Below are positions 6,558 to 47,215 of a DNA stretch of 64,000 nt, in pieces. Each line of letters opens with the position of its first letter. The stretch's first letter is position 1. The translations under genes were made by a program, and so were the position numbers. Under the pieces are notes generated by a model that made no database searches, was not told where the DNA came from, and was given only the letters and a program-made list of their open reading frames with translations. The DNA comes from Macrostomum lignano (lineage: Eukaryota). The stretch lies in contig NIVC01000254.1 of assembly GCA_002269645.1 (NCBI GenBank), forward strand, positions 124,001 through 188,000. The letters are read 5' to 3'.

Positions 6558-8095
6558 CTATTTAAAGGATATTTGAACAAGAAAAACATCGTTATAGCAG
6601 CAAAAAAGTTCTGCTAAAAGAATAAGCACATTGGATGATTGAAAATATGTTGAGCTACAACAGATACACTTCATATTAGAACTGCTACAACATTCTCCGC
6701 ACTGCAACTCGAGACCAAGCTGTTTGGAGTCGAATTCTCTAAGACACCGACCCATGCGGCTGAAAACTTCAGCAGAGCCCACAGCAGAGCTACACACGGT
6801 AAAAAATCCAAACCAATGGCAGTAACAAGCCGATCCGGGCAATCCATTAACTTGACTGTATCGCCGGTGCTTAAACTCATCCGGTGCACAGCTGATGGGG
6901 TGGCCAGAATGAAGCTGCGTCCTGAGACTGTCACACTACGAGCGTCCTTCACATGATCAGGCAGCTTCAAGCTCTGCTGCAGCTCAAGCGACTCCAGAGA
7001 GTGGCAGTTGACATAGCCGTCACTGAGAATGTACAGCTTCTCCATGTCATGCGTAAGACTCGGTTTCTCACCGAACTGCACATCCTGGACAGTTTGCAAC
7101 TTTGCACCCGTCAGGTCAGTCATGATTATAGACATAGACAGAATTTCTTCATCTTTGCCAAGCAGGAATATTCTCTTAATATGGTTTACAAGTCTTCCGG
7201 AAATTAATTTGATTCCGTTGTTTGGTATTTGCAATTGGCAGATTACATCATTCAAGTCCATGCTATCGATACGAAACCACCAATCATTCATAGTAAAGCC
7301 ATTGGCAACAGAAAGAATACAAGAATGAGGAAGGGCATAAAAACCATCCTGCAGTGTAGTGGATACTGATTGTTTAGAGCAAAATAATCCATCCGTATTA
7401 GTGATTACATCAGTGAAAATCCAATCAGAATCCGCACAACACTGCGTTCTCTTAGCTACGCACACTGCAGATTTCCATCTGCTCTGCAGATCGTCATCAG
7501 ATTCCTCAGCTTCAGCTGCAAGAGTATTTACCGCCTGTTGAAGTCTCTCTACCTGTTGCACACCGCGGTCAACAATATTGGCCCACGGATTTGTGTTTGG
7601 AGCATCTACCATTGACATATTAAACTCCTTTCTCAATCGAAAACTGCTCAATGCGTTTCCTTCAGCATCTGCAGCACTGATTTCAGCCGACAGTTGCTCC
7701 ACAGAGCTTAGAGATCTCAGACTCTGCTCCAAATCGGCGATCTTTGAGTCCAGTCTACCGATCACATTTTCTCTGCATTGTTTCACTCTCTCCATGATTG
7801 AATCGAACATGTCAGCTGCATCAGCCCTGTCACTTTCCAGATCAAACTGGGCCCCTCTGGTGTTTTTGATTAGCTGGGACACTTTGGCCAATGACTCATC
7901 GGTTTCTATTTTGATGGCGCTCAATTGCAGCTGGAACTGTTTCTCATCTTTCTTCAAGTGCTCAGCACACAGAGGACCTTCCCAGTAGAGCCCATGACCG
8001 GAAGCTTGACTGTAGCAACTCCTCAGGCTGCACTGCTTGTCCTGCTCAGAGGTTTCATCGTTCGGTAGATCGCTATGTGTGCTGCTAGTTGCCAT
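6558..8095 (-). CDS. Cluster gene A1: zinc motif - coiled coil - beta-propeller protein, with one apparent frameshift at an A6 run (~6801-6806)
   Basis: The family-equivalent start MATSST is at 8095. ORF 6671..8212 aligns with paralogs up to AIGLDF. The family-type C-terminus (…QCGECC…LVQISFK*) continues in ORF 6558..6842, and adding one T restores a single frame. Confidence 0.8.
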
Positions 8096-8329
8096 GGCAT
8101 GCATTAAAGAAAAGTGCATATCATAAACTGTGCTATCATAGGTAGCTAACTTTCCTCTACCATCTTTAAGTGTCGATGAGTTATTTGCTAAATTATATTC
8201 AGGGATTGCCAATACTTCAGTCTGTTCGATTCTATTTCAAATAAATACTATATCGCTGTATTGCTGGAATAGATGATGTCAACTAACCCAAATGAGACAT
8301 TGAAAACAAAAAATGGAAGTGCTTCCCAG

Positions 8330-9420
8330 CACGCCATGTAACAAAGACTGAGGATATTACGAGTACATTAGTATGGAAAAGATATTGCGAATAGCTCTAC
8401 AACTATTTGTAGTTAAACAAGACATCATTCAAAATATAGGAGGTAAAATGGTGTACCAGTTATAAGACATTAGAAAAGAGGAAGAAATCTTTTTGTCAGA
8501 AGTTAAAGCTACCATCAAAGAACTGAAGCAGAAAGAGGCACCAGGAGAAGACAACAGCAAGACATAACTCATTCAAGATGGTGGGGAAATCACAGCGAAA
8601 GTGCTGGACAACCTTTGCAACAAGAACCTGAAGACAAGAGTCGCCAAATTAGTTGGCAGAAAGTATTCCCATCATCACCATACCAAAAGACTAACAGTTC
8701 ATGTAGAACCATCAAGCTGTCAGTCACACGTCAAGTGATAATAAAAGTAATTTTGAAAAGGATCACACCCGAGATAGAAGTTCTAAGCGAGGGCCAAGCT
8801 GGGTTCAGAAGAAGATTCTTCTTCTCCTTGAGAATTCTAAGCAAGAAAGCAAGATAATGATAGCAGGAGGAGGGACGCGGAGAGTTTGTTGGTGAATGTG
8901 AAGGTTAATCGTGTACATTTGGAACACGTGTATGAGAAGCTTTACCTACCTTGGATCGGGAATAGAGAAGACAATGAAAAGTCAAACATGGAAATTCGGA
9001 TACGAATTGGAAGAGCTGCAAAGCGCTGGCAAAACTGGACAACATTGTATCGAGCAAGAAAACATTCACATGAAAAATAAAATTGATGCGATCGGTAGTA
9101 ATGGCAAATCTTCTTCGAATGATGATGAAGACCTACAGAAAAATGCCGTGCCAAGCATTTTCGGTGAAAGGAGGTGGAAGGCTGTGTAGGTCTGATCAAG
9201 AGAAGGAATTTCCGCTTCTTCGGGCATGTTGCGAAAAGCGATGGAGTAATTGATGGTGGTGTTAAGGGAAAAATGGGCAAAGCCAAGCCGCAAGGTGACT
9301 GGACAGGCAATCTGAAGGACTGGGGAGTGAACAGATGCTGCAGCTGAGCAAGATGGCCTTGGATCGAAGGAGGTGGAGAGTCGCTGTCAAGAAATGGGGT
9401 GCATCAACGACTATAATGAC
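8330..9420 (+). mobile_element. Decayed RTE-clade LINE reverse transcriptase fragment
   Basis: Broken motifs SEVKATIKELKQKEAPGED, EGQAGFRR and EIRIRIGRAAK, plus a 3' LDRRRWR-like end. Multiple stops and frameshifts. Confidence 0.75.
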
Positions 9421-11089: not shown

Positions 11090-11998
11090 CTAGGAGATGC
11101 AGAGGCGCACTAAAACGCGATGGGTGCAGGACAAGCTGAGAAATAACAGCAAAGTGCTCGTCGACTCCCTGCTAAAACTGCAGCAACGAACCGACTCGAG
11201 GCGGTAATTTATACCACAGTTCTGGCAACGAGTGAAATAATTCGCACCTAACGACACCAACTCAATTACCTTAATCTCTCGTCCGTTGCCATCCAGAATT
11301 TTCACACTTCCATCACTATCGCACACAGCCAGAAATTCTGAGCAGAGTTCAGCTACACATCTAATATTCGAGCTACCGCTCTGATACAGCTTCGAGAATT
11401 GATGAGTTCTAAGACTCATCCGATATACTGCTGACGAGGTGGTGATGATCAAACTGCGGTTTCGATGCACGATGCTATGAGCCTCTTTAATATCATGCGA
11501 TATTTTTATCTTCGTCTGCAGCTCGCATGTTTCCAAGGACATGAACTGGACACCACTATGTCCGAGAATGTACAGCTTATCCATGTCGTGAGTCATGCCG
11601 AGTACACTTCCAAGCTGCACATGCTGAATAGTGCGAAGCTGAGTTCCCGCCAGATCAGTCACTGTCAAAGACTGGCTGCCATTGAGCAGGAAACACTGCT
11701 GCAGATGATTCACCAATTCGCCAGACGCAACTTCATACGGAGTGCTCCATCGACTGAGAAGAGCACCATCGAAATTGTAAACTGAAACGCATCTAGGATA
11801 CCTACTTGAATTGCAAAAGACGAATACACAAGCTCTTGGAAGGGCCTGAAATCCCGGCTGACACGTCTTAGAGAGCGACTGACCAGAGTAAAAGTATCCA
11901 TCAGTCTTGTAGCACAAACCGACGAAAGCAATTAATAATCTAACATCCATGTGGATGGCGGATAGACTTGGTTGGCACGTCTTAAATCTCTCTACCAT
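11090..11998 (-). CDS. Cluster gene B1: propeller-only class B member (302 aa; no zinc motif or coiled coil)
   Basis: Intact ATG-to-stop ORF. Its closest relative is 45692..47215 (CQNCG…SCTHRVLVRL vs CANCG…SCNHRVLVRV). It begins at about the coiled-coil/propeller boundary. Confidence 0.75.
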   Translation of the reverse strand: MVERFKTCQPSLSAIHMDVRLLIAFVGLCYKTDGYFYSGQSLSKTCQPGFQALPRACVFVFCNSSRYPRCVSVYNFDGALLSRWSTPYEVASGELVNHLQQCFLLNGSQSLTVTDLAGTQLRTIQHVQLGSVLGMTHDMDKLYILGHSGVQFMSLETCELQTKIKISHDIKEAHSIVHRNRSLIITTSSAVYRMSLRTHQFSKLYQSGSSNIRCVAELCSEFLAVCDSDGSVKILDGNGREIKVIELVSLGANYFTRCQNCGINYRLESVRCCSFSRESTSTLLLFLSLSCTHRVLVRLCIS

Positions 11999-12400: not shown

Positions 12401-13909
12401 TTAACCAATAGAAACGCGCCCAAGGAGTCGGTGTCCGCATGACATGTGCATAAGAAGAACGAAACAGCTTGTGGAATCTAAATAGGCTCCGCAGCAGATG
12501 ACAGAGTCACAGATGATATTATTGTATCTACTCCGTCCACACGCTTGACAATAGTTCACGTAGTTGAAACCATAGTCTGAAAGAGTGAAACTTCTCAACC
12601 GCTGCCCTGAGCTGCTCACAAAAACCACATTTCCATTAGTTTCGCAGACTGCAATAAATATAGAGCCAATAACAGCGATACAAAAGTTCTGACTGTCTAT
12701 CAGCTTCTTCACACCACCGGTGCCGATGTTTAATCGATGCACAGTTGATGGAGTAGCCAGAATTAAGCTGCGTCCTGAAGCTGTTACACTGCGAGCGTCC
12801 TTCACATGATCGGGCAGCGTCAAGCTCTGATGCAGCTCAAGCGACTCCAGAGAGAGGCAGTTCACGCAACCGTTGCTGAGAATGTACAGCTTCTCCATGT
12901 CATGAGTGAGGCTTATTGGAGCTTGGCACTGCACATTCTGGACACTTCGCAACTGGGTGCCAGTCAGGTCAGTCACAATTAGGGACTGATTGGTTCCAAG
13001 AAGAAATATCTGCTGAAGATGATCAACAAGTGTGCCTGAAGCTAGCTGCACTCCGTTGTTACCAACGTTCCACTGACTGATTATTTGCATGTCTGATCTA
13101 CAGACCATGAAAAACCAATACTGCGAATTATTAGCCACACAAAAAGTGCTTCCGCTAGGGAGAGCTTGAAATCCGTTTTGGTTTGTCTTCGTGACTGCTT
13201 GAGCTGAAAAATAGTATCCAGCAGTATTGCTACAAACAGCAGCAAGAAGATAGAATACATTGCTGGCCAAATTAGGAGACACCTTAACAGTGGGCACGGC
13301 AGACTCAAGTCTAGCTTTTAGTTTCTCACCGTCAGGATCCTCAGCCTCATCTGCGATAGTCTCAACAGCCTGTTGCAATCTCAGTACCTGGTGCACACTG
13401 TTGTCTACCGGATCGACAAACTCTTCTGATATCGGGGCATCCTCAAGCGAGATCTGGACCTCTTGATGCAGCCTGAATCCTTTAGTTGAAACACCTTTGG
13501 CTTCCTCCTCGCCGATATCGACCGAAAGTTTCTCTATGAAGCCGAGAGTTCTCAAGTTCTGCTCTACATTGTCTATTTTGGAGTCCAATCTGCTCATCAC
13601 ATTTTCTCTGCACTGCTGCAATCTCTGAAAGATTGCGTCAAACAGGTCAGCGGCCTCAGCTCTGTCGCTGGTCAGATCAAACAGAGCTCCCCTGTTTGCT
13701 TTCAACAGTTCATCTGTCTTCGATAATACCTCAGTGTTCTCTGATTTAACATCGGCGTATTTCTTTGCGAAAATCTTTTTATCTTTAGCGAGATGTCGCT
13801 CGCAGAGTTGCCCGCTCCAGTATATTCCAAGACCTGACGAAGGCTCTGTGCAATGCGTCATGGTGCACGTCTGTGCATCGGATTCTGCATCGACGCTATC
13901 GGTTGTCAT
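12401..13909 (-). CDS. Cluster gene A2: zinc motif - coiled coil - NHL-like beta-propeller (502 aa)
   Basis: Intact ORF with C15-x4-C-x15-C-x2-H, a heptad-rich helical region and blade motifs (VTDLTGTQLRSV, SSSGQRLRSF). A splice acceptor TTTTCTCTTTTCAG immediately precedes ctATG, indicating a 5'UTR intron. Confidence 0.9.
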   Translation of the reverse strand: MTTDSVDAESDAQTCTMTHCTEPSSGLGIYWSGQLCERHLAKDKKIFAKKYADVKSENTEVLSKTDELLKANRGALFDLTSDRAEAADLFDAIFQRLQQCRENVMSRLDSKIDNVEQNLRTLGFIEKLSVDIGEEEAKGVSTKGFRLHQEVQISLEDAPISEEFVDPVDNSVHQVLRLQQAVETIADEAEDPDGEKLKARLESAVPTVKVSPNLASNVFYLLAAVCSNTAGYYFSAQAVTKTNQNGFQALPSGSTFCVANNSQYWFFMVCRSDMQIISQWNVGNNGVQLASGTLVDHLQQIFLLGTNQSLIVTDLTGTQLRSVQNVQCQAPISLTHDMEKLYILSNGCVNCLSLESLELHQSLTLPDHVKDARSVTASGRSLILATPSTVHRLNIGTGGVKKLIDSQNFCIAVIGSIFIAVCETNGNVVFVSSSGQRLRSFTLSDYGFNYVNYCQACGRSRYNNIICDSVICCGAYLDSTSCFVLLMHMSCGHRLLGRVSIG

Positions 13910-20409: not shown

Positions 20410-21860
20410 CTGCCCGTGGTCGCCAGGGGTTAGCGAAATGGGCGGCAACGCCTCCTCGCTGTTTCCGGACGCACGGAGCCCCCTGCAGCTAAGTCAAGTC
20501 AAGTACGAGTACTTGAACAAAAAACAACAAAATTGCGTGGAAGTTCTTGAATAATAAGGCTAGCTATAAAAAACGAACTTTGATCGGCGCTAAATTTGAG
20601 CACTGGAAATTACAAATTTTGCAGATATTACGAGCTAACAGATTTTACTAACATAGAATTTCGAAATCCACAGCCAGAAGCCTGTTGCTTACCCATAAAA
20701 ATTTCTGGCGCGCAAGGATTTTTTAGGATCTATATGTGCACTTTATGTAGAGTTGCGGGATTAAAGTGTTGCTTGCAAAATTTAGGGAAGTGAGTTTTCG
20801 GTAATATAAAGTTATGCGATCTCAAACTTGGGCGTCGTTAAGGTTAGGCAATTTAACAAATTGAAAATTTGTGGTGTGAAAGCAACAACCTTCAGACATA
20901 AAGACAGTTACCTATTAACGGCACATTGTTCAAGAATCGAACGAAACTTTCCCCATGACTATCACTAATTTGAGTACTTTAACAGATCGTTATTGAAAGA
21001 GATATATGAAATTGACAAAAATTACACGTCATATAGCCTCAGAATTCTGGGTTTAGTGCTCAAATAGACAATAACTATTTCAATAATTTTTACAGAAAAA
21101 TAATAAAAGATTTTGAGACTTCTAGGCCAAAACTACATACTCGTATTTATGCATATCTATACGCCCGTATAATAGAAAAATATTCTAAACAACAATTGGG
21201 TACGTAAAAATAATAGCATAAACATTTAATAGTTTCCGACAGTAGTAAAGTAGAAAAATCTGTAGCATGTCTTGATGAATACTTTCGGAAAATTTTAGGA
21301 ATGCCAAAACCACATTGCCAGTATAAAAGTATGTTTTTACATTGGTAACACTTACATGGCAGCGGACATTAGGTTAGCTGATTTATCGTAAATTAGAGTG
21401 AGCAAACAAAAATACGATTGTAAGTATTAAAAAACCTCAAATACCAATCGTCTACTTCTGTTCTAAATTGGACGGCTCAATTTAAAAAAGCATAAGAGCT
21501 ATGCAGAAAGGTTGAAATGCTGAAATCAGATGGAATCTAAGCTTTATACTCATGCACACAGCCAGTAGCGTAGCCAAGGTCAAGAAGGGCTTAGAGTCCT
21601 GACAGAAAAGCTAATAGGAACATGAATTTCTAATAGCCAATGAACAACGCAAGTTTTTATAAGGTACAAAAACACTAAAGTTGTATGGACTATAAAAATT
21701 CCTATTAATCTTATTTGTACCGCCATTCAGCTATATCGGCTGTCTCAACACAAATCCAAGAGGATCGAACTAGAAATGTATTGACACTCCCTATCATCGA
21801 ATAAGTTTAAGACTCGGTAGCTCAGTTTTAAAAACTTTCACTATTTACAAAGTTTTAGTA

Positions 21861-22298
21861 CTAGTGGGCTGACTGACTTCTGATATCAACCCAAAGTTTC
21901 TCTGCACAGCTGAGAGACCTCTGGATCTGCTCCATATCTGCAATATTCGAGTCTAATCTACCAAGCACTTTCTCCCTGCACTCATTCACTCTTGCAATGA
22001 CATCGTCAAACAGGTCAGCCGCCTCAGCCCGGTCAGTCGTCAGCTCGAATTGAGCAGCTCTAGCGCGGTTTGTGAGCTGCGAGGCACTAGCGAGTATCGA
22101 ATCGGTTTCATTCTTAATGCTGGCGAACCGACTTTTAAACTGCTCTTTGTCACTATCCAGATGCTCAGCGCAGAGAGGCCCGTCCCAATAGTGTCCGCGG
22201 CCCGAAGCCGGGCTCTGGCAGTGGCTGAGGCTGCACAGTCGGCTTGCTGGTCGATCCTGCTCGTCGCTTGTTGCGCTTGATTTACGTTTTGTTGCCAT
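21861..22298 (-). CDS. Cluster gene B2: N-terminal-only member (zinc motif + coiled coil, 145 aa)
   Basis: Intact ATG-to-stop ORF with C-x4-C-x15-C-x2-H and DRAEAADLF…CRE. It ends after the first coiled-coil half. Confidence 0.75.
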   Translation of the reverse strand: MATKRKSSATSDEQDRPASRLCSLSHCQSPASGRGHYWDGPLCAEHLDSDKEQFKSRFASIKNETDSILASASQLTNRARAAQFELTTDRAEAADLFDDVIARVNECREKVLGRLDSNIADMEQIQRSLSCAEKLWVDIRSQSAH

Positions 22299-24350: not shown

Positions 24351-24540
24351 ACACGAGAGTTATATAGTACTGCTTCGTACAATCTATTGGTTTATATGAG
24401 CAATTACTGATTACATTAGTAGCCCTGTTAGAAGAGTAGAGGCCCATGGGATTATCTGTGAACATATTTACTAACCATCGTTACTGCCAAATAAGTAATC
24501 TAAAAAACACCATTGCGCTTTATCACCTAAAGAAAATGTA

Positions 24541-31230: not shown

Positions 31231-31509
31231 CTGAGAAACATTGAAAAGTCGCCAATCTGTGCGCCAATGAGAGATTTCTCTTGGACTATTCTGAAATCTG
31301 AAATAAAAGACGCGAGAAACTGAGGGGTAGCTTTAATCAGTTCAACCCACATACACGGCTTCCCACACTTCATTCCTCAACCAAAGTCAGCCGCGTGGCG
31401 TCGCTAAGTTGCGTCAGTCGCACAGATTGAGATACTTTTTACCTGAATTCTCAAAAGTGGCGACCACAGACGGAATCTTCTGTGATGGCGACTTTTCGAT
31501 GTTGCTAAG
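31231..31509 (-). mobile_element. TA-MITE copy (duplicate of 24541-24817)
   Basis: Near-identical sequence with the same TIRs. Confidence 0.85.
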
Positions 31510-31776
31510 TATATAATTGTCAAGAAAACAACTACTAATTTTTAAAAAACGGAAATGGACTACGTATAAGATATATAAAAATTTGGGCGCGGTTAAAAAC
31601 TTACCACAAAACATACATCAGATTAAAACTGCATGCAAGCAAAATAGTATAGGTAGCAACTAAAAACATTATCCTCGTCTCCGATCAATTTTAAAAAAGG
31701 TCCTTAGTTAAATTATTCGAAATCATACCTTAATAGAGTAAAAGTATCAGAACAAAACGAGCAAACAGCTCCATGA

Positions 31777-33291
31777 TTAATCATAACCAAAAGAAACGCG
31801 CCCAAGGAGTTGGTGACTGCATGACCTGTGCACAAGAAGAACAAAACAGCTTGTGGAATCTAAGTAGGCACCGCTGCAGATTATAGATTGGCAGGTGGTA
31901 TTGTAATTGCCCTGTCGACAAGTTTGGCAATAGTTTACGTAGTTGAAACCCGAGTTTGTCAGACTGAAACTTTTCAAACGCTGCCCTGAGCTGCTTAAAA
32001 AAACAGCATTTCCATTAGTTTCGAACACTGCAATCAATCCAGAGTCAATGACAGCGACACAAAAGTCCTGACTGTCTATCAGCTTCTTCACACCACCGGT
32101 GCCGATGTTTAATCGATGTACAGCTGATGGAGTAGCCAGAATTAAGCTGCGTCCTGAAGCTGTTACACTGCGAGCGTCCTTCACATGATCAGGCAGCGTC
32201 AAGCTCTGCTGCAGCTCAAGTGACTCCAGAGAGAGGCAGTTCACGCAACCGTTGCTGAGAATGTACAGCTTCTCCATGTCATGAGTGAGGCTTATTGGAG
32301 CTTGGCACTGCACATTCTGGACACTTCGCAACTGGGTGCCAGTCAGGTCAGTCACAATTAGGGACTGATTGGTTCCAAGAAGAAATATCTGCTGAAGATG
32401 ATCAACAAGTGTGCCTGAAGCTAGCTGCACTCCGTTGTTACCAACGTTCCACTGACTGATTATTTGCATGTCTGATCTACAGACCATGAAAAACCAATAC
32501 TGCGAATTATTATTAGCCACACAAAAAGTGCTTCCGCTAGGGAGAGCTTGAAATCCGTTTTGGTTTGTCTTCCTGACTGCTTGAGCTGAGAAATAGTATC
32601 CAGTAGTGTTGCAGCAAACAGCAGCGAAAACATAGAAAACATTGCTGGTCAAATTAGGCGCCACCTTAACAGTGGGCACGGCAGACTCAAGTCTAGCGTT
32701 TCGTTTCTTATCCTCAGGATCCTCTGCCTCATCTGCAAAAGTCTCAACAACTTGTTGCAATCTCAGTACCTGCTGCACACTGTTGTCTACCGGATCGACA
32801 AACTCTTCTGATATCGGGGCATCCTCAAGCGAGATCTGGACCTCTTGATGCAGCCTGAATCCTTTAGTTGAAACACCTTTGGCTTCCTCCTCGCCGATCT
32901 CGACCGAAAGTTTCTCTATGAAGCCGAGAGCTATCAAATTCTGCTCCACATTGTCTATTTTAGAGTCCAATCTGCCGATCACATTTTCTCTGCACTGCTG
33001 CAATCTCTGAAAGATTGCGTCAAACAGGTCAGCGGCCTCAGCTCTGTCGCTTGTCAGATCAAACAGAGCTCCTCGGTTTGATTTTAGGAGTTCGTTTGTC
33101 TTCGCTAATGGTTCAGTGTTCTTTGATTTTATATCGGCGTATCTCCCCGCAAAAATCTTCTCATCTTTAGCGAGATGTCGCTCGCAGAGTTGCCCGCTCC
33201 AGAATTTGCCAAGACCTGAGGATGGCTCCGTGCAATGCGTCATGGAGCACGTCTGTGCATCGGATTCTGCATCGACGCTTTCTGTTGCCAT
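31777..33291 (-). CDS. Cluster gene A4 (504 aa)
   Basis: Intact ORF, 5'UTR acceptor before ATG, same architecture. Confidence 0.9.
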   Translation of the reverse strand: MATESVDAESDAQTCSMTHCTEPSSGLGKFWSGQLCERHLAKDEKIFAGRYADIKSKNTEPLAKTNELLKSNRGALFDLTSDRAEAADLFDAIFQRLQQCRENVIGRLDSKIDNVEQNLIALGFIEKLSVEIGEEEAKGVSTKGFRLHQEVQISLEDAPISEEFVDPVDNSVQQVLRLQQVVETFADEAEDPEDKKRNARLESAVPTVKVAPNLTSNVFYVFAAVCCNTTGYYFSAQAVRKTNQNGFQALPSGSTFCVANNNSQYWFFMVCRSDMQIISQWNVGNNGVQLASGTLVDHLQQIFLLGTNQSLIVTDLTGTQLRSVQNVQCQAPISLTHDMEKLYILSNGCVNCLSLESLELQQSLTLPDHVKDARSVTASGRSLILATPSAVHRLNIGTGGVKKLIDSQDFCVAVIDSGLIAVFETNGNAVFLSSSGQRLKSFSLTNSGFNYVNYCQTCRQGNYNTTCQSIICSGAYLDSTSCFVLLVHRSCSHQLLGRVSFGYD

Positions 33292-36200
33292 GGCTGAAAA
33301 GAGAAAATTAGCTAGTAAACATACGAGTAATATTAAATATGTATAAATAATGAGTTCTATGCGCCGCTGAATCTGTGTTATGGACCTGATTTTATGAAAA
33401 ACTAGTCAACATATTTTTAATCCAAATGGCAATAGTAGAATACTGTTAATGCATAGACACTATCGAGAAGTTGTTGAGGTTTAGGTGTTAAAATATGATG
33501 CCTTAATTTTTAAGTCATAAACATCAATTATAAATGCATTACTGAAAATCGAAGGTGACTAGCTACTTTCGTGTTCTAATTTACCAACGGTTACGATATG
33601 TAGCTCGTAAAACAAAAACTTGTGTAGACTTATTCAAGCTGGTAAGCAATAGCAGACAGTGCTTCCAGTTTCTCGCGCGCGCGCTGTCTCTCAATAAAAA
33701 AGGCTACTGTCCACTGGATCGACCCCAGTTATTTAAAACCAGTGCACCTCGAACCGATATCTCAGGCTTCATCCTAGTCTGGAGACTGGAGGCTGCCAAC
33801 AAGATTTCTTTGACTCCGTAACTCTAGTTTCAGCTAAAATATTTTCTAGAAAAACTGTCTGACCCTCATCAGCTCAGTATGAGATTTTAAAATCCAGATT
33901 TTGACATTTTTATTGAGAAACCCAGCCTAGGAGCGTATACGTCTTGAGAGTTTATTAGTAAAAACAGCTCTAAAGTAGACAGGTGTTGACGAAATTAGCT
34001 ATTTTTATTGTCTAAGCCAACAGTGAACTCTAAGCAAAACTCGTAAAAGACTTAGGCTTAGGGCAAAGGGCAAATAGAGCAAAACAGAGCAGCTAACAGT
34101 TATAAATTTTGCTAGCTGAGACGACACTATAGCGAGCAAAAATTTGAAAGCTTTCTGAAGTTGAAGCTGAGTCAAATTCAAAGGTTTCCATGCTTTTCGG
34201 CACCCCAGTTTATGGCGCCTAAATTAGAAGGTAATCTAAATTTTGAATCTGGGGGAATCACAGAAAAAATACCCACTAATCCGGGCTTGTGTACAAACCC
34301 TAATGCTGCAGTCAACGCAACCTACTACTCAAGTGATTCCCGATTGTCTCTCCAAATCCCAGCTAGATTCTAAACCAGTCGAATCCAAAAACACGCGGGG
34401 GACAGCGGCTTACGTGGCGTTTTTCAGCAGCGGAGAATAGTCGCTCGTATATTGGCAGATTACGATTAGGAGCGCTGACGAACAGAGCAGGTGTACGCGA
34501 TCGAAAAAGGGGCAGCTGAAGATCGCCAATTGAACACAGTTTAAGCCTAAACGGGAGGACAGGAAAGCAGTCCGGAGAGGGCCGAGAAAGTGGCCTGTAA
34601 GGGATCTCAATAAATAGAGCTGCCAGGCCGGGCGCATGGGGGAGGGGAGAAAGAACTTGGGAAAAGAAAACCGGGAGTTAAGTAGACACAACAAAGGCCC
34701 AGCCAATCAATTAGAGCAAGATGACTTAACCCTGGGCATCCAATCACACGCGAGACGGAAGTAACACCACCACAACTAGACTACATTAGCAGAAGGTATA
34801 AAAATGGGTGACTATTTGGGGGCGGGGGGTGACTAAGCAGCCAGACGGCTACAAGGGTGGGTTGGGGCCGACAGTGCACTAAAATCAAGCAAGGCTGGCT
34901 AGGTGGAGAACTACACGTGTAGCCCATTCACTACATAAAAATAAATGCTCTACAACACCTAAAAATAATTAACTATAGTATCATTCATTTTGATAAGCTG
35001 ATGTGCTTGTTACTGACATTGCAGAGTCTCTCATTAAGAAATTCATTAGCTGTACCCAAAAACTGTAGGAAACCTGCGTGTTAAGAAGGCTTAGTGGCCA
35101 AATGATGAAGTCTATAACCAATACTATGTACAATCAAAAGAACGATTACAAAAATATATTTTTTTCTCATTGCTCCGTTATGGAATCACTAAATTTCTTA
35201 GAAAATCGAAACATAAAAAACAAGTTCTACTTTTTTAGTATTCAATAAAAGTAAAACAGAAACTTAAAAGGCTAAGTACATGTATATTAAAATATCAAAA
35301 TTGCTAACGAATCAATTAAATCAAACTGTAAAAAATTGACAAGAAAAATAAACTAAGTACAAGAACATATAAAATTGCACACAATGTTGCTAAAACATAA
35401 AAATTGATCAGAAGTTAAATTTTGCAATTGGTAAGGCACACAAATAGGTGCACAAAACTACTATTACTGAAATCACAGGTAAATAATGGCTATTCTGGAT
35501 ATACACTTTCACCATAAAATCTAAGCAAAAGACCACAAGCTTGTGTAAAACCAAGCTGAGGGAGGTAAAATCAAAACAGACATAAAATAGAAAGCTTAGC
35601 TAATCTTAGTTCTTATTTTAAATTCCAATAATTTCCACAAGGATGTCACCTTAAAGCTCTACAATGGGAAGCAAAGCTAGGTCCCGCACCAAACCGACTG
35701 GAATGCATAACTGTTCGGTACAGTTGCCTAAAATCGCCCAGATCCCGTCGCGGTCTCTCCCTTGATGTCTTAGAGAATAAAGTGCATAAAATGGGGATAT
35801 AACGTCAATTTAGGACATTAAAGAACCCAAACCGAAGCCTTAAAGCTACTGGAATCGGTAGCTGGTCCGACCAATTGATTAGAAACGCGAACATGTCAAT
35901 CCGGTCTCCTCTTAGAAACATCAGGTCTGCTCAACAAATTGTACAAGTAGCAAATCACGAATTGCATCACTTTATTTTTACTTTCATTCCAGTACTTAGT
36001 TAGACCTCCCATATGTAAATATAAAAAACAGATGGAAATAGACGAAAACGGCCCATATGCTCTATGGCAATAGTTGGAGTACATAAAAAACAATAAAAAG
36101 TGAGTTGACGGAAAAATGAGCATTGGAAATCAGCATTGAATTTTTTTTTACTTTTATAGCGTTTACTGAAATAAATTCTAATTCTTATTTAAAGCAATTC

Positions 36201-36954: not shown

Positions 36955-37170
36955 TCAATATTCACCAACAGAAACGCGCCCAAGGAGTCGGTGACAAAAT
37001 GGCATCTGCACAATAACAACGAAACAGCTTCTGGAATTTAAATAGGCTCCGAAGCCGATAATATAGTAGGTGACAGTATTCATACTACACTCTGCACCAG
37101 CTTGACTATTGTGATTCAATTTAAAACCAGAGTTTGACAGAGTGAAACTTTTTAACTGCTGCCCTGAGAC
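36955..37170 (-). pseudogene. Class A C-terminal remnant
   Basis: SGQQLKSFTLSNSGF…GAYLNSRSCFVV…CHRLLGRVSVGEY* matches the class A last blade. The CxxC motif is lost. Confidence 0.75.
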
Positions 37171-38185: not shown

Positions 38186-39533
38186 TTAACCAATAGAAAC
38201 GCGCCCAAGGAGTCGGTGTCCGCATGACATGTGCACAAGAAGAACGAAACAGCTTGTGGAATCTAAGTAGGCACCGCTGCAGACTATAGATTGCCAGGTG
38301 GTATTGTAATTGTTCTGTCGACAAGTTTGGCAATAGTTTACGTAGTTGAAACCCGAGTTTGTCAGACTGAAACTTTTCAACCGCTGCCCTGAGCTGCTCA
38401 CAAAAACAGCATTTCCATTAGTTTCGAACACTGCAATCAATCCAGAGTCAATGACAGCGACACAAAAGTTTTGACTGTCCATCAGCTTTATCACACCACC
38501 GGTGCAGATGTTTAATCGATGTACAGCTGATGGGGTGGACAGTATTAAGCCGCGTCTTGAAACTGCTACACTCCGAGCGTCCTTCAAATGATCAGGCAGC
38601 TTCAAGCTCTGCTGCAGCACAAGCGACCCCAGAGAGAGGCAGTTCACGCAACCGTTGCTAAGAATGTACAGCTTCTTCATGTCATGAGTGAGGCGTAGTG
38701 GAGGTTGGAACTGCACATTATGGACACTTCGCAACTGGGCGCCACTCAGGTTAGTCTGAATTAGGGACCGATTGGTTCCAAGAAGAAATATCTGCTGAAG
38801 ATGATCGACAAGAGTACCTGAAGCTAGCTGCACTCCGTTGCTACCAACGTTCCACTGACTGATTATTTGCATGTCTGAATTACAGACCATGAAAAACCAA
38901 TACTGCTTAGCCACACAAAAAGTGCTTCCGCTAGGGAGAGCTTGAAATCCGTTTTGGTGAAAAATGACCATGACAAACAGCAATATATTCATACGACACA
39001 AAAAAGTGCTTCCGCTAGGCTTTTAGATTCTTGTTTTTTGAGACTGCTTGCCTGATGAGAAACAGTCTACCATCGAGTATTGTTTCTGATATCGGGGCAT
39101 CTTCAAGCGAGATCTGGACCGCTTGATGCAGCCTGAATCCTTTAGTTGAAACACCTTTGGCTTCCTCCTCGCCGATCTCGACCGAAAGTTTCTCTATGAA
39201 GCAGAGCTCTCAAGTTCTGCTCCACATTGTCTATTTTAGAGTCCAATCTGCTCATCACATTTTCTCTGCACTGCTGCAATCTCTGAAATTCAGCGGCCTC
39301 AGCTCTGTCGCTGGTCAGATCAAACAGAGCAACCCTGTTTGCTTTTAACAGTTCATCTGTCTTCGACAATACCTCAGTGTTTTTTGAAATCGGCGTATCT
39401 CTTTGTAAAAATCTTCTCATCTTTAACGAGACGCAGAGTAGCCCGCTCCAGAATTTGCCGAGACCGGACGAGGGTTCCGTGCAACGCGTCATGGTGCACG
39501 TCTGTGCATGGGATTCTGCATTTCAGTTGCCAT
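38186..39533 (-). pseudogene. Class A pseudogene A5 (frameshifted 5' part, internal deletion/rearrangement ~38955-39090, intact propeller half)
   Basis: 38186-38955 encodes a clean propeller half. 39090-39533 carries the N-terminus with several small deletions. ACACAAAAAGTGCTTCCGCTAGG is duplicated at the junction. Confidence 0.85.
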
Positions 39534-39749
39534 AGCTAAAAAGAGAAATAATAAACATAGTATTAGCTATTAAACATATGAGAAATACAATATTGTCTTG
39601 ATAGAAGATACACCGGTTGTGCCAACAGAGAACTCTGTATATTATTTGCAGATAGCTGCTCTTCGTAGCAGTACAATGTCATTAGAAACAGAGAGAAGCT
39701 AGAAGGAAGATAGCTCAGAGGCAATACAGCAATTGGACTTTATTGGCTC

Positions 39750-41165: not shown

Positions 41166-42732
41166 CACACCCGCCTTATAAAGTGTTCGATGGAAAATAA
41201 AGTCCGAGGATGCGTTTTCATCAGGCCAAGGCTTCACCATTCTACGAGTACTTTCTACCATAGAACATTTTATGTGCAGGTGATGAAATTAATTCTCCAG
41301 TTTTTATATCGAGGGTGTAGAGACAGGGCTATAAATAATATTTTTCTTATCTTCGCCATAGAAAAAATCTCTAGAGAACTTATAATGGGTACATATAGAT
41401 TAAGCTGTTTATTAGACCAACTAGGACAGGAGACAAAGAGATGGATTTGCCTGAACTTGGATTTAAGTTGATCGATGCTTTGTTTGCATCCACCACTACT
41501 GCATCTACGATTACAGTTATTCTAGCTGTTGCTGACTCTGACGACACTGTTCGGGCATCAGCATCTAGACGTTTTGCAGTCGTGTCTTTTGACGACATCC
41601 TACGAAAGTTAAATGCTTCTATTCCCGACACGCAAGACGCAAAAAGGAACTGGCGCTCAATCTATTCAACCGATGACGAGACGAGGGACAAACAAGCATT
41701 CCCTCTGATGAGAGGAATGACCTGATGGTGACAAAGCCTATGAAGAATTGGAGGTCCTGGAGGCTGGAATTTTTTTGTTAAGTCTTCGTCTTTGAAGTTC
41801 GTAAGAAAGACGGCAGCCAAAACAACGTTTCAACACTGAAGGACTGTGTTTGCAATGCTTCAACACCACTGCGCATCAGCTGAAAATAAATGTTTCGTTA
41901 TGGAAGGACCCGCAATTTGTGAAGACAAGACGGACCTAGGATTGCTTCCATGAAGACCGTCTGCAAAGGAAACATACCCGGAATGCATGCCAGCGAGCCT
42001 ATCCCAGCTGCTTTGGAACACGAATTGTGGCAACGAGGACCGTTAGGGACTGAAAATCCAAAATAGCTTTTGAACACGCTAGTGTTTACATTGGCAAGTG
42101 CTTCGCCCTCCGGTTTGAACTGAACTCTACAGCTTACACTACGATAAAGACATTGTAGTTGAAATTGACGCGAATGGAGAAGCGCTCGTTTTCAAGGAAA
42201 ACAAAGCCAACAAGACTAATAATTGTGGAATGAAGGCTAAGAAAAGCTTTCCACCACGAGAAAGCTTTTCTAAAGGCTTTATTCCAAAGGCTATATTTGG
42301 CTGTATTCTTGTTACTTGTAGAGAACAGAGATTCTATCCAGATGTCCCCCATCGTGGGGCGAAGATTGCTAGTCTCGTACTAATATGCTAAATTCTAAAT
42401 GCTAAGCGCTAATGAAGCTGCGCTATGGACCAGATATAATTAAGTAACAAATTAACTACTTTTTTAAATTCAACTACAAGACTGCTTAATGCATAAAATT
42501 TTAAGTTCATCAAGTACGAGCGTAAATATTTTAAAGTATTGGCGTTTATAGCGACGTCTTGAAAATTAGATTTTTCTAGTCATTAAGTCAGTGCCAATAA
42601 ATAATTTATTACTTTAAATGAAAAGTAACTAGTTAGTATAAAAAGAGTATAACGATTGAAATAACACACCTAAGTATGGAGAGAATGCACCAAAAATATG
42701 CACAATATAGTACATGATTATTGCTTTGAACT

Positions 42733-42829
42733 CGCTCCAAAATTTGCCGAGAACGGATGAAGGCTCTGTGCAACGCGTCATGGTGCACGTCTGTGCATCG
42801 GATTCTGCATCGACGCTTTTATTTGCCAT
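42733..42829 (-). pseudogene. Class A 5' stub A6 (first ~32 codons)
   Basis: MANKSVDAESDAQTCTMTRCTEPSSVLGKFWS, after which homology stops. The upstream acceptor and spacer are conserved with A2/A3. Confidence 0.85.
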
Positions 42830-44817: not shown

Positions 44818-45247
44818 CAGGGTTTTTTACCACAATTAGTACCCCATGAGGTATTAGTCAACTGATTTGGGGTACTATTTTGCCCATTAATACCCCAGAA
44901 AAGGGTACTAATTTTTATCGAGTTCAATTGAAACAAGTTAAGCTTTTTTAAATTAGCAATTTAATTAAAATTCTGGCTGGCCCGGTATGGGTCTTGTATA
45001 TCCAGGCACCTGTGTGGTGAGTCAGACTGTCAGGCTAAAAGTAAGAGAGGGTTGGAAACTTGGAATATATTTGTCAGTCTCGCTCAACCCAACTCTCAGC
45101 CCCAAGGACTGGCTCAGCCTTGGGGTGGGTGGGCCCAAGGCCCTGCAGAATTAGAAATTTCGTGGGGTATTACTCCTCCAAAATGGGGTACTACTTAGAG
45201 GCTTGATACCCCAATTCGGGTACTAATCAGCAGTGAAAAAAGCACTG
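44818..45247. mobile_element. hAT-type MITE
   Basis: TIR CAGGGTTTTTTAC / GTGAAAAAAGCACTG, 8-bp TSD (T/G)TTTATAC, subterminal GGGTAC repeats. Absent from the homologous spacers. Confidence 0.8.
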
Positions 45248-45691
45248 GTTTATACTAAGTAGCATAAGCTTTATACTCATGCACAGTCAGTAGAGTGGCC
45301 AAGGTCATGAGGGACTTAGAGTCCTGACAGGGTCCTGACAGAAAAGCTGATAGGAACATGACTTTTGAATAGTCAGTGAACAACGCAAGTTTTTATAAGC
45401 TTATAGAAACACTGGAGTTGTATGGACTATAGAAATTCCTATTGATTTTATTTATCCCGCCATTCAGCTACGAGTATACCGACTGTCTCAACACAAAGCA
45501 AAGACGTCAAACTAGAAATGTATTATGACACTCCCTATCATGGAATAAGTTCAAAACTCGGTAGCTCAGTTTTAAAAACTCACTTTAAAGTTTGAGTCTT
45601 AGTAGAGCTGAGTGACTTCGTTAACAGGGAAAAGATGTGCTGTATTGAATAGAAAGATATGCTTCTAAATAAATCGGTTTCGGTTATAGCA

Positions 45692-47215
45692 CTAGCAGAT
45701 CGACACTCGCACTAAAACGCGATGGTTGCACGACAAGCTGCATATCAGCAGAAAGGAGCTCGAAGATTCTCGGCTGGCGCCACAGGAGCTAATTGACTGC
45801 AGAACATACGATACACCACAGTTAGCACACGTCTTGAGATAGTTTACGCCTAGTGGCACCAGATCAATCACTTTAATCAGTTGTCTGTTGCTGCTAAGAA
45901 GTGCAACGCTGCCATTATTTTCGCAGGCAGCCAGAAATCCAGATCCAATGTCTACAACGCACAGCACATTTTGACTATTGCTCTGCCAGACTTTTACGCA
46001 TCTTTTCGTGCCGAGACTCATTCGATACACTGCTGACTGGGTGGCCAGTATTAAACTACGACCAGAAACTGTCATATGACGAACATTCGCAGTGTCTTTC
46101 GAGAGTTTCATGCTATCCTGAAGTTCGCAAGTGTCCAGCGACAGGCAGTTTATGCAGCCATCACCGAGAATGTACAGCTTCTCCATATCGTTGACTATGA
46201 TCGGCATTTCAGCTTGAAACTGGACATTGTCAATAGTTCGAAGCTGTGTACCAGCTAGGTCCGTCACAATCAAAGAATTGTTATTACCAAGCATATAGAT
46301 TTGTTGCTGGTGATTCACAAGAGCTGCAGACACTAATACAACATTGTTCGATGGCTGATTTCTTTGGCTAAGTACCACGAGTTCGTTGCTATAGAAAGCG
46401 ATATGCCAGTTCGCACCATAGTTACCTACTGCAAGTACGCAGGAGCTTGGCAAAGCCTGAAAGCCATTCTGTTGCGTCTTGGAAACCAGCTGAGCGGAGT
46501 AAAAAAATCCATCCGTACGATTGCAGTTGAAAACGAATTGGATGTAGTTTGTAAGAAGAACCTTGGCAGTTGGCACAGCTGACTCCAGCAAAGATCGCAT
46601 TGCTGCCCCGTCTGCATCCTCGGCAATTGCAGCTCGAGTCTTTGTCTCCTGCAGCAGCTTCTGGACCAGTTCAACGCTGCTGTCAACTGGATCAGTCCAA
46701 GCATCGGAAATGGGAGCATCTTCAAGTGCGAGTTGCATCTTCTTGCTCAACTGGAAACTTTTAACAAGATCGCCAGACATTTCAGTCCCGTTGATATCTG
46801 CTCGAAGCTTTTCAAAGAAGTGCAACGACTTCAGACTGGCGTCCATGCTGTCGATCTTGGCGTCCAGCCTGCCAATGACGGTACTGCGGCAGCGCTGGAC
46901 AATCTCGAGAATCTCTTCAAACATGTCTGACGCATTGGCTCGGTCGCTGGTCAGCTCGAACAAAGCGCCGCGCGTCAAGTCCATCTGCTCGGCAACGCGG
47001 CGCATTGCACCATCGATGTTCGCCTGACGATAAGAGTAGTAGCTCTCTCGGAATCGGTCGGCGTCTCGCTTCAGATGGGCGGCGCACAAGGGCCCGTCCC
47101 AGTGGCTGCCCTGACCAGCAGCGTCTTGGCCACAGTTAGGCAGACTGCAAACATCGTGCTGCTGCTTGTTGTCGCCTTGCTGCTTTCCTGACGTTGCTTT
47201 TTTGGCAGAAGACAT
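45692..47215 (-). CDS. Cluster gene B4: full-length class B member (507 aa)
   Basis: Intact ORF with C-x4-C-x15-C-x2-H, coiled coil, propeller blades and CANC…SCNH. Confidence 0.9.
   Translation of the reverse strand: MSSAKKATSGKQQGDNKQQHDVCSLPNCGQDAAGQGSHWDGPLCAAHLKRDADRFRESYYSYRQANIDGAMRRVAEQMDLTRGALFELTSDRANASDMFEEILEIVQRCRSTVIGRLDAKIDSMDASLKSLHFFEKLRADINGTEMSGDLVKSFQLSKKMQLALEDAPISDAWTDPVDSSVELVQKLLQETKTRAAIAEDADGAAMRSLLESAVPTAKVLLTNYIQFVFNCNRTDGFFYSAQLVSKTQQNGFQALPSSCVLAVGNYGANWHIAFYSNELVVLSQRNQPSNNVVLVSAALVNHQQQIYMLGNNNSLIVTDLAGTQLRTIDNVQFQAEMPIIVNDMEKLYILGDGCINCLSLDTCELQDSMKLSKDTANVRHMTVSGRSLILATQSAVYRMSLGTKRCVKVWQSNSQNVLCVVDIGSGFLAACENNGSVALLSSNRQLIKVIDLVPLGVNYLKTCANCGVSYVLQSISSCGASRESSSSFLLICSLSCNHRVLVRVSIC

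What the first reader, a model, noticed from the sequence alone, without database searches (positions are those of the whole stretch)
6558..47215. Tandem cluster of an uncharacterised RING-less zinc finger - coiled coil - beta-propeller family (candidate intracellular immune/recognition receptors)
Seen: at least 11 same-strand loci over 41 kb (four intact full-length, one full-length with a single frameshift, three half-genes, three remnants). All copies that retain the N-terminus share an invariant C-x4-C-x15-C-x2-H motif containing G-x2-W-x-G-x-L, and a helical DRAxAxD(L/M)F…CR…RLDS region. Full-length copies add repeated blade motifs. Established: B-box/coiled-coil/NHL architectures characterise TRIM-NHL proteins, and birth-and-death tandem arrays are typical of innate-immune genes. 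Inference: a lineage-specific receptor family with a non-canonical single-zinc B-box-like module.
Basis: partly seen in the sequence, partly recalled or inferred. Interest (0 to 1): 0.8.

Follow-up and report, generated by a model that had tools for sequence, protein, structure and literature searches.

The report
Flatworm zinc-knuckle, coiled-coil, NHL-propeller gene array
This stretch of the flatworm Macrostomum lignano genome carries a tandem array of an undescribed, apparently species-restricted gene family that looks like a stripped-down TRIM-NHL protein (one zinc knuckle, a long coiled coil, a beta-propeller, no ubiquitin-ligase RING); nothing yet shows that it acts in immunity.

Summary
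Eleven same-strand (-) loci of one family lie between 6558 and 47215: four intact genes of about 505 aa, one copy with a single frameshift, three half-genes and three remnants.

The window is Macrostomum lignano DNA. An exhaustive profile search of 1.84 billion representative proteins found relatives only in this species. They fall into at least 14 subfamilies.

All N-terminally complete members but one share the exact spacing C-x4-C-x15-C-x2-H. P0013 has Tyr in place of the His.

With a 21-sequence alignment, AlphaFold2 gives a confident model (pLDDT 80.8):
- a small zinc knuckle;
- a 103-residue helix followed by shorter helices;
- a 290-residue beta-propeller.

The window clade alone matches no known family. 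It is, however, clearly homologous (hhalign 99.7%) to sister clades whose profile hits the NHL domains of Thin/TRIM32, TRIM71, TRIM2/3 and Brat (E down to 2.5e-14).

There is no RING. No B-box or A20 similarity could be detected. Recent paralogs have dN/dS of 0.4-0.6, and the annotation is transcript-based.

The structural reading is therefore supported. The "B-box-like" label and the immune-receptor function are not. I read the family as a new RING-less variant of the TRIM-NHL architecture, most likely a dimeric non-enzymatic binding adaptor.

The parts
6558..8095 (-). Type C copy. Full length, with one frameshift in a T6 homopolymer at about 6806-6811. It may be an assembly error.
   Evidence: tblastn of the intact homeolog P0038 gives aa 1-432 in frame -1 and aa 429-512 in frame -3, at 94-95% identity.
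11090..11998 (-). C-terminal half-gene (propeller only). The 302-aa ORF equals P0006. It is closest to the 45692 type (48% identity).
12401..13909 (-). Type A intact gene, 502 aa, intronless.
21861..22298 (-). Type D N-terminal half-gene (zinc knuckle plus first part of the coiled coil, 145 aa). Its 3' flank is colinear with the 3' flank of the 45692 gene, so it was truncated by deletion or recombination.
25086..26603 (-). Type A intact gene, 505 aa.
28573..29010 (-). Second type D N-terminal half-gene. It lies in the 96% identical duplicate of the 20562-26692 unit.
31777..33291 (-). Type A intact gene, 504 aa. It corresponds to the main exon of the annotated protein P0001 (BOX15_Mlig017959g3).
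36964..37167 (-). C-terminal remnant (aa 434-502 equivalent, 49% identity).
38186..39540 (-). Type A pseudogene with 8 frame-shifting and 3 in-frame deletions relative to 31777-33291. Its homeolog P0002 on another contig is intact.
42671..42829 (-). N-terminal remnant: promoter plus the first 32 codons of a type A gene. It is used as exon 1 in the annotated models P0001 and P0002.
45692..47215 (-). Type B intact gene, 507 aa (44% identical to type A). This is the protein that was modelled.
47075..47149 (-). Codons for C23-x4-C28-x15-C44-x2-H47 of the 45692 protein, the putative single zinc site. C44/H47 sit at the start of the 103-residue helix.
45698..46570 (-). Codons for the beta-propeller domain (residues 216-505) of the 45692 protein.
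   Evidence: AF2 secondary structure and pLDDT; Foldseek hits
20562..33376 (.). Two tandem copies, 96% identical, with a period of about 6.7 kb. Each unit carries a D half-gene and an A gene. 12274-14579 is a third partial unit (92.6%).
   Evidence: self-blastn

Best explanation
The region is one tandem array of a Macrostomum-restricted multigene superfamily of intronless genes of about 505 codons. They encode cytoplasmic proteins with three parts.

(i) A single C2CH zinc knuckle (C-x4-C-x15-C-x2-H). Its last two ligands cap the N-terminus of the coiled coil.
(ii) A helix of about 100 residues followed by three shorter helices. This is the layout of a TRIM-type antiparallel dimerising coiled coil.
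(iii) An NHL-type beta-propeller of six or seven blades.

The family most likely descends from a TRIM-NHL (Brat/TRIM2/3/32/71-like) ancestor. It lost the RING and the canonical B-boxes, so it cannot itself ligate ubiquitin.

Most likely mode of action (inferred): the coiled coil makes a dimer that presents two propellers, and the propeller binds a specific RNA or protein ligand. The protein would then act as a non-enzymatic adaptor, repressor or sequestering factor.

The array evolves by segmental duplication, gene conversion, truncation, TE insertion and pseudogenisation. The Zn-CC-only half-genes could act as dimerisation partners or decoys.

Shown: copies and coordinates, species restriction in current databases, fold, homology chain to NHL, absence of RING and B-box, purifying but relaxed selection. 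Inferred: zinc binding, dimerisation, ligand binding, any biological role.
For: Copies and array:
- 11 loci on one strand.
- A 96% identical duplication of 6.1 kb and further partial units.

Organism and range:
- All hits are M. lignano 'hypothetical proteins'.
- The exhaustive hmmsearch of 1.84e9 representatives gave only 18 hits, all of this species.
- There are at least 14 subfamilies at 50% identity. All N-terminally complete members but one (P0013, His to Tyr) have the same CCCH spacing.

Fold (AF2 with the 21-sequence alignment, mean pLDDT 80.8, pTM 0.67):
- helix 45-147;
- helices 150-166, 179-199 and 204-212;
- 24 long and 3 short strands over residues 216-505.
- The top 50 Foldseek PDB hits are all propellers, E of 1e-11 to 1e-9.

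Homology chain:
- Window-clade profile against the sister clades: hhalign probability 99.7%, E 1.6e-26, 405 columns from the zinc motif to residue 430.
- Sister-clade profile against PDB: Thin NHL 2.5e-14, TRIM71 2.5e-8, TRIM2 2.7e-6, TRIM3 4.7e-5, Brat 1.7e-4.

No RING: ORFs start 10-25 residues before the zinc motif, and Pfam finds nothing.

Selection: dN/dS is 0.38-0.61 among type A paralogs and 0.2-0.5 between types.

Transcription: the GenBank annotation of Mlig_3_7 is built only from assembled transcripts and excludes repeat-overlapping ones (PMC5730564). A splice-acceptor-like sequence lies just upstream of the ATG in four of the five type A copies examined and about 17 nt upstream in the 45692 gene.
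Against: - The window clade on its own matches no NHL model or structure by sequence. The NHL assignment is transitive.
- The recognisable NHL signal lies in the last two blades. These are the part least alignable in the window clade, where a Cys-rich segment sits instead.
- The blade number is unresolved. Twenty-seven DSSP strands and about seven by-eye repeats suggest seven, whereas TRIM-NHL propellers have six. No NHL structure is among the top 50 Foldseek hits.
- No similarity of the N-terminal half to TRIM B-box-CC could be detected. Descent from a TRIM, rather than from another NHL protein that acquired a coiled coil, is therefore not proven.
- Zinc binding, dimerisation and ligand binding are untested.
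- Transcript evidence cannot be assigned to individual near-identical or homeologous copies.
Confidence: 0.6

Rival explanations
1. First reader's reading. The proteins are intracellular innate-immune recognition or restriction receptors. The propeller recognises pathogen or retroelement molecules and the array diversifies by birth and death.
For: - Species-restricted expansion into at least 14 subfamilies, several of them in tandem arrays.
- Pseudogenes, truncations and recent duplications in the array.
- Relaxed constraint, with dN/dS up to 0.6-0.8 in the propeller half of recent paralogs.
- By established knowledge, TRIM families include expanded antiviral members.
Against: - No effector or signalling domain is present: no RING, death-fold or TIR.
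- dN/dS is below 1 everywhere tested.
- Variable sites among paralogs are spread over helices, strands and loops. The only excess is at the blade-closure segments, not on a defined face.
- No expression or challenge data could be found.
- Tandem expansion is equally typical of reproductive, chemosensory and other fast-evolving families.
Confidence: 0.15
2. The proteins are lineage-specific post-transcriptional regulators or cytoskeletal adaptors used in germline, reproduction or stem-cell biology. This would parallel Brat, Mei-P26, LIN-41, NHL-2 and Thin, and would have nothing to do with immunity.
For: - The best PDB matches of the superfamily profile are precisely the RNA- or myosin-binding NHL domains of Thin/TRIM32, TRIM71, TRIM2/3 and Brat.
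- Brat-type TRIM-NHLs also lack a RING (established knowledge).
- Reproduction-related genes evolve rapidly in Macrostomum (abstract of PMC7336406, seen).
Against: - None of the family's gene ids occurs in the held parts of the neoblast/germline tables or the reproduction-related tables. One of those files is truncated.
Confidence: 0.2
3. The ORFs belong to a transposable or otherwise selfish element, or are neutrally decaying dead copies that happen to stay open.
For: - The genes are intronless and multi-copy, whereas M. lignano genes average about 5 introns (PMC5730564).
- The array is interspersed with repeats and a LINE.
- Several copies are broken.
Against: - No transposase, RT, integrase or capsid domain is present in the family.
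- Duplication units include promoters and flanks and lie head-to-tail. They are not dispersed with terminal repeats.
- Paralogs range from 36% to 96% identity, with ORFs kept open across homeologous contigs.
- dN/dS is 0.2-0.6.
- The annotated 'coregenes' explicitly exclude transcripts overlapping repeat annotation.
Confidence: 0.04

Closest known systems
RING-less TRIM-NHL proteins of the Brat/NCL-1 type (B-box, coiled coil, NHL)
   Same: - The order of modules is the same: a zinc module directly N-terminal to a coiled-coil helix of about 100 residues with back-folding helices, then a C-terminal NHL-type propeller of about 290 aa. No RING is present.
- The superfamily profile hits the Brat NHL domain at E 1.7e-4.
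   Different: - There is one four-ligand C2CH knuckle in place of one or two B-boxes with seven or eight ligands each.
- The N-terminal half shows no detectable sequence similarity to TRIM B-box-CC.
- The propeller is possibly seven-bladed.
- The window clade has lost the NHL sequence signature and gained a Cys cluster in the last blades.
- The genes are intronless, tandemly expanded and found in one species only.
Thin/TRIM32, TRIM71 (LIN-41), TRIM2/TRIM3 NHL domains
   Same: They are the best sequence matches of the family's sister clades: 6d69 E 2.5e-14, 7qrx 2.5e-8, 7qrv 2.7e-6, 7qrw 4.7e-5. Canonical 'G-l-i-f-V-s-d...n...V-r-V' blades are visible in the last two repeats.
   Different: - Those proteins carry RING plus B-box (plus filamin in some) and are E3 ligases. 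The present family has none of these modules.
- Only the two C-terminal blades align significantly.
Expanded antiviral TRIM arrays of vertebrates (TRIM5/6/22/34 cluster, fish finTRIMs)
   Same: Tandem, lineage-specific, birth-and-death arrays of coiled-coil proteins with a C-terminal recognition domain.
   Different: - Those use a PRY-SPRY recognition domain with hypervariable, positively selected loops, and a RING effector.
- Here the recognition domain is a propeller, there is no RING, and no hypervariable patch was seen.
- This is a functional analogy only, recalled from general knowledge.

Membership tests
TRIM / RBCC (tripartite motif) family | N-terminal RING finger (C3HC4) | tested here: not met
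   ORFs begin 10-25 residues before the CCCH motif. A stop codon precedes the start. No RING is found by Pfam on full proteins or on isolated N-termini.
TRIM / RBCC (tripartite motif) family | One or two B-box zinc fingers (B-box2: C-x2-H-x7-C-x7-C-x2-C-x5-H-x2-H, two zinc ions) | tested here: not met
   - Only four conserved ligands, C-x4-C-x15-C-x2-H.
- No PF00643 hit at E<=10 on 10 isolated N-termini.
- hhalign of the family profile against the verified TRIM5 B-box2-CC sequence (5w9a) gives 1.7% probability.
- The x15 spacing equals the distance between ligand pairs 1 and 3 of the B-box2 consensus. That is an observation from memory, not a test.
TRIM / RBCC (tripartite motif) family | Long coiled coil directly after the zinc module | tested here: met
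   AF2 predicts one continuous helix at residues 45-147, followed by helices 150-166, 179-199 and 204-212, with pLDDT 76-91. Dimerisation itself was not tested.
NHL-repeat beta-propeller (Pfam PF01436, TRIM-NHL C-terminal domain) | Sequence match of the window's own proteins to NHL models or structures | tested here: not met
   No NHL hit at E<=1 in Pfam. Neither a window protein alone nor the window-clade profile hits anything relevant in the PDB.
NHL-repeat beta-propeller (Pfam PF01436, TRIM-NHL C-terminal domain) | Homology to proteins that do match NHL (transitive link) | tested here: met
   - Window-clade profile against the sister clades: E 8.5e-12 to 2e-6 over the zinc motif through the propeller.
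- hhalign probability 99.7%, E 1.6e-26.
- Sister-clade profile against PDB NHL domains: E 2.5e-14 to 1.7e-4.
- Sub-threshold Pfam NHL hits in P0008 and P0016.
NHL-repeat beta-propeller (Pfam PF01436, TRIM-NHL C-terminal domain) | Closed beta-propeller fold | tested here: met
   The AF2 model has pLDDT of about 81-92 over most of residues 220-450, with one 10-residue block at 74, and repeating four-strand units. All of the top 50 Foldseek PDB hits are propellers, with target-normalised TM-score up to 0.60.
NHL-repeat beta-propeller (Pfam PF01436, TRIM-NHL C-terminal domain) | Six blades | tested here: inconclusive
   - 24 long plus 3 short DSSP strands (27 in all), and about seven by-eye repeats in P0016, suggest seven blades.
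- Internal repeats are too diverged for hhalign to detect.
A20-type zinc finger (C-x2-4-C-x11-C-x2-C) | Sequence similarity to A20 fingers | tested here: not met
   No Pfam hit. hhalign against the verified Rabex-5 A20 finger (2c7m) gives 0.3% probability.
Death-fold (CARD) domain | Six-helix bundle with sequence similarity to CARD | tested here: not met
   - There is a weak NLRP1-CARD hit (E 0.007) with the merged profile only.
- It is absent with either sub-profile.
- The region lies inside one continuous predicted helix.
Transposable-element-encoded protein | TE enzymatic or structural domains, terminal repeats, dispersed near-identical copies | tested here: not met
   - No TE domains in the family.
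- The copies are head-to-tail, with flanks included in the duplication units.
- The annotation excludes repeat-overlapping transcripts.

The most novel reading that the evidence does not exclude
A flatworm-specific, greatly expanded family of non-catalytic TRIM-NHL derivatives acts as intracellular recognition or restriction factors against viruses or the abundant retroelements of M. lignano. It would use a new type of single-zinc cap on a dimeric coiled coil. The naturally truncated Zn-CC-only paralogs would act as regulators or decoys. This would be an innate-immune receptor class built on an NHL propeller.
Probability: 0.12. Interest if true: 0.75.

Novelty: new variant of a known kind. Interest (0 to 1): 0.42.

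Why it matters
M. lignano is a transgenic, RNAi-amenable model for regeneration and stem cells. More than 45 of its annotated 'hypothetical proteins' can now be assigned a fold and an evolutionary origin.

The family shows how a TRIM-NHL scaffold can be reduced to a zinc knuckle, a coiled coil and a propeller, and then expanded massively in one lineage.

If the propellers recognise RNA or foreign molecules, this would be a new and easily testable recognition system in flatworms. If not, it remains a clean case of birth-and-death evolution in a recently polyploid genome.

The rigidly conserved C-x4-C-x15-C-x2-H cap matches no described zinc-finger family and deserves a structure.

Tried and rejected
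- Pfam on full-length window proteins, sister-clade proteins and isolated N-termini gave nothing above threshold. The only relevant result was two sub-threshold NHL hits.
- PDB sequence searches with a single protein and with the window-clade profile found nothing.
- The first AF2 run, with a shallow 10-sequence alignment, gave pLDDT 50.7. It served only as a hint.
- The search for homologous proteins with the 21-sequence profile returned only the close copies, because the word index is limiting.
- The NLRP1 CARD match (E 0.007) was rejected. It was not reproduced with either sub-profile and lies inside one continuous helix.
- B-box homology was tested by hhalign against TRIM5 B-box2-CC and gave 1.7%.
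- A20 zinc-finger homology was tested the same way and gave 0.3%.
- Internal blade repeats could not be detected by hhalign of single blades against the propeller; they are too diverged.
- Literature and supplement searches found no paper and no expression record. I searched for the gene ids, for 'Macrostomum + NHL' and for 'TRIM-NHL + flatworm'.
- The variable-site map among paralogs showed no hypervariable face.
- The TE-encoded reading was rejected for the reasons given under the rival explanations.

Full report
**What is in the sequence**

The window is eukaryotic DNA of about 40% GC. It contains one GC-rich insertion. ORF listing and tblastn with two intact copies show 11 loci of one family, all on the - strand, between 6558 and 47215.

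- Four are intact, intronless ORFs of 502-507 aa: 12401-13909, 25086-26603, 31777-33291 and 45692-47215.
- Copy 6558-8095 is full length but changes frame once. The change lies in a T6 run at about 6806-6811. The homeologous protein P0038 from another contig reads through with T7, so this may be a long-read assembly error.
- 11090-11998 is a propeller-only half-gene.
- 21861-22298 and 28573-29010 are half-genes carrying only the zinc knuckle and the first part of the coiled coil.
- 36964-37167 and 42671-42829 are small remnants.
- 38186-39540 is a near full-length pseudogene with 8 frame-shifting and 3 in-frame deletions.

C-x4-C-x15-C-x2-H with G-x2-W-x-G-x-L, and DRAxAxD(L/M)F...CR...RLD, occur in all N-terminally complete copies. 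The only deviation is RLDA instead of RLDS in the 45692 copy.

**Where it comes from and how wide the family is**

The closest database proteins are 'hypothetical protein BOX15_Mlig...' entries of the flatworm Macrostomum lignano. Some of them are encoded by the window itself. The window lies on a 652-kb contig of assembly GCA_002269645.1.

An exhaustive HMM search with the window-clade profile covered 1.84 billion representative proteins. It found only 18 proteins at E<=1e-3. Every one that could be looked up is from M. lignano. A further search with a distant member found five more, again only from M. lignano.

Clustering gives at least 14 subfamilies at 50% identity and at least 23 at 90%. 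Part of this multiplicity reflects the homeologous contigs of this recently polyploid genome. At least one other subfamily also lies in a same-strand, intronless tandem array. No paper in the searchable library mentions these genes or combines 'Macrostomum' with 'NHL'.

**Fold**

Pfam, and PDB sequence searches with the window proteins alone, give nothing. AF2 with the shallow window-clade alignment was poor, at pLDDT 50.7.

With a 21-sequence alignment spanning the superfamily, the 45692 protein models confidently, with mean pLDDT 80.8 and pTM 0.67:
- residues 21-43 form a small beta knuckle carrying C23 and C28;
- C44 and H47 sit at the first turn of a single helix of 103 residues (45-147);
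- three shorter helices follow (150-166, 179-199, 204-212);
- residues 216-505 are all-beta, with repeating four-strand units.

All of the top 50 Foldseek PDB hits are beta-propellers.

The blade number is uncertain. Twenty-four long plus three short strands, and about seven by-eye repeats, point to seven rather than the six of TRIM-NHL domains. I could not obtain coordinates, and the internal repeats are too diverged for hhalign.

**Link to NHL and TRIM-NHL**

The window clade is unambiguously homologous to the more conservative M. lignano clades. hhalign gives 99.7% probability, E 1.6e-26 and 405 aligned columns, running from the zinc motif through the coiled coil to residue 430 of 502.

A profile of those sister clades alone hits the NHL domains of several TRIM-NHL proteins in the PDB:

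| PDB target | E-value |
|---|---|
| Drosophila Thin/TRIM32 | 2.5e-14 |
| TRIM71 | 2.5e-8 |
| TRIM2 | 2.7e-6 |
| TRIM3 | 4.7e-5 |
| Brat | 1.7e-4 |

The merged profile gives similar results. The significant matches cover the last two blades, where canonical NHL sequence is visible. In the window clade this very part has diverged and carries a Cys cluster.

The propeller is therefore NHL-type by transitive homology. The best relatives are specifically the TRIM-NHL group, which makes descent from a TRIM-NHL ancestor the most economical reading.

**What it is not**

- There is no RING. The ORFs start 10-25 residues before the zinc motif.
- The zinc module is not a recognisable B-box. Only four ligands are conserved. 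Pfam finds no B-box even at E<=10 on isolated N-termini. hhalign against a PDB-verified TRIM5 B-box2-CC sequence gives 1.7%.
- An A20-type finger, which the G-rich loop recalled to me, gives 0.3%.
- A weak NLRP1-CARD hit was not reproducible and falls inside one continuous helix.

The family therefore fails membership of TRIM/RBCC in the strict sense, although it resembles a Brat-type RING-less TRIM-NHL in layout.

The exact CCCH spacing is kept in 35 of the 36 N-terminally complete sequences checked; P0013 has Tyr for His. This argues strongly for a structural zinc site of an undescribed type. I note, from memory of the consensus, that x15 equals the distance between ligand pairs 1 and 3 of B-box2. 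A half-B-box relic is therefore possible but unproven.

**Real genes, or TE or dead ORFs?**

- dN/dS (Nei-Gojobori) is 0.38-0.61 between the three recent type A paralogs. Where dS is not saturated, it is 0.2-0.5 between types. Constraint is relaxed but clearly present.
- The GenBank annotation of this assembly was built solely from assembled transcripts. Transcripts overlapping repeat annotation were removed (PMC5730564). Annotated family members therefore have transcript support, although reads cannot be assigned among near-identical copies.
- Four of the five type A copies examined have a polypyrimidine-AG acceptor 2 nt before the ATG; in 25086-26603 the AG is mutated.
- The annotated mRNA of the 45692 gene begins right after an AG 17 nt upstream of the ATG. 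This fits spliced-leader trans-splicing, which affects 39% of M. lignano genes.
- No TE domain occurs in the family.

**Array dynamics**

- A 6.1-kb unit carrying a D half-gene and an A gene is duplicated at 96% identity (20562-26692 and 27269-33376). A third partial unit, 12274-14579, is 92.6% identical.
- dS differs between gene halves in a mosaic way. This suggests gene conversion.
- The 3' flank of the D half-genes is colinear with the 3' flank of the 45692 gene, at 73-85% identity over about 1.1 kb. Their coding parts are only 36% identical at the protein level. The D genes are therefore chimeric truncation products.
- A 5.98-kb LINE with a 13-bp flanking direct repeat sits exactly at a unit boundary. 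The paralogous unit preserves the empty site.

**Function**

Nothing in the data addresses function directly. By analogy with TRIM-NHL proteins, I propose the following. The long helix forms an antiparallel dimer that presents two propellers. The propellers bind RNA or protein. Without a RING, the proteins act as non-enzymatic adaptors, repressors or sequestering factors.

The immune-receptor idea remains possible but has no specific support:
- there is no effector domain;
- dN/dS is below 1;
- variable sites among paralogs are spread over the whole protein, with the highest density at the blade-closure segments rather than on a face.

A germline or post-transcriptional role, as for Brat, LIN-41 and Mei-P26, is at least as likely. 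Neither could be tested, because the expression tables I could search did not contain these ids.

**Verdict**

The structural interpretation is largely right. 'B-box-like' is unsupported and 'immune receptor' is speculative. This is a new, RING-less and B-box-less variant of the TRIM-NHL architecture, known so far only from M. lignano. Interest is moderate.

Noticed in passing
window 14580-20561 (+): A GC-rich (54-59%) non-LTR retrotransposon is inserted at a repeat-unit boundary.
- It carries an ORF1, an APE-RT ORF (16663-19110) and an RNase H ORF in another frame (19157-20305).
- It is flanked by a 13-bp direct repeat, TACGAGTACTTGA.
- The paralogous unit shows the empty site at about 27269.
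   Followed up: partly
window 13910-13925, 33292-33307, 42830-42845, 39541-39556, 47216-47240: Four of the five type A copies examined have 'ttttctcttttcag' (pseudogene: '...tttag') ending 2 nt before the ATG; in the 25086-26603 copy it reads 'cat'. The annotated mRNA of the 45692 gene (P0004, 'YEPKTM...') starts right after an AG 17 nt upstream of the ATG. These are probable spliced-leader trans-splice acceptors.
   Followed up: partly
window 42671-42829 and 33291: The annotated models P0001 and P0002 join the 53-codon remnant ORF as exon 1 (GT donor at 42670) to the acceptor in front of a full-length gene, about 9.4 kb away in this window. This is either a real chimeric transcript or a mapping artefact between homeologs.
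   Followed up: partly
window 45692-45830 (residues 463-498 of the 45692 protein) and the equivalent part of the other full copies: The window clade carries a conserved Cys cluster in the last blades: C-x2-C, then C or CC about 10 residues on, then SC-x-H. The canonical NHL clades lack it. Model confidence drops to 61-68 there. It may be a second metal site or disulfides.
   Followed up: no
window 12401-13909, 25086-26603, 31777-33291: Synonymous divergence is mosaic. For 25086 against 31777, dS is 0.21 in the N-half and 0.06 in the C-half. For 12401 against 25086, dS is 0.09 and 0.12. This suggests gene conversion between paralogs.
   Followed up: partly
window 22542-22831 / 24539-24822 and 29251-29543 / 31226-31514: A pair of inverted repeats of about 290 bp (83% identical), about 1.7 kb apart, lies between each D half-gene and the next A gene. 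It is a foldback or MITE-like structure.
   Followed up: no
window 48892-53707 (-): Next to the array lies a multi-exon gene with an AKAP-17A-like RNA-binding domain (exons at 51239-51778 and 53255-53707) and an Arg/Glu-rich tail (48892-49362). It is an ordinary conserved neighbour.
   Followed up: partly
window 61996-63277 (+): A fragment of an LTR retrotransposon pol gene (RT-RNase H and integrase core domains).
   Followed up: partly
window 557-1242 and 53881-54972: Two satellite-like tandem arrays: a 19-bp unit repeated 36 times and a 29-bp unit repeated 38 times.
   Followed up: partly
window 48104-48173 (+): An Rfam tRNA hit just above threshold (33.8 bits). ARAGORN does not call it. It may be a tRNA-derived SINE or a pseudogene.
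   Followed up: partly
window 44078-44431 and 50670-51030: A 360-bp repeat, 95% identical and in inverted orientation. One copy interrupts the 3' flank of the 45692 gene. It is probably a young small mobile element.
   Followed up: no
window 39600-42650: About 3 kb, partly GC-rich (52% over 40-42 kb) and without long ORFs, separates the N-terminal remnant from the pseudogene. The homeologous contig appears to have them adjacent. It is probably a degraded insertion.
   Followed up: no
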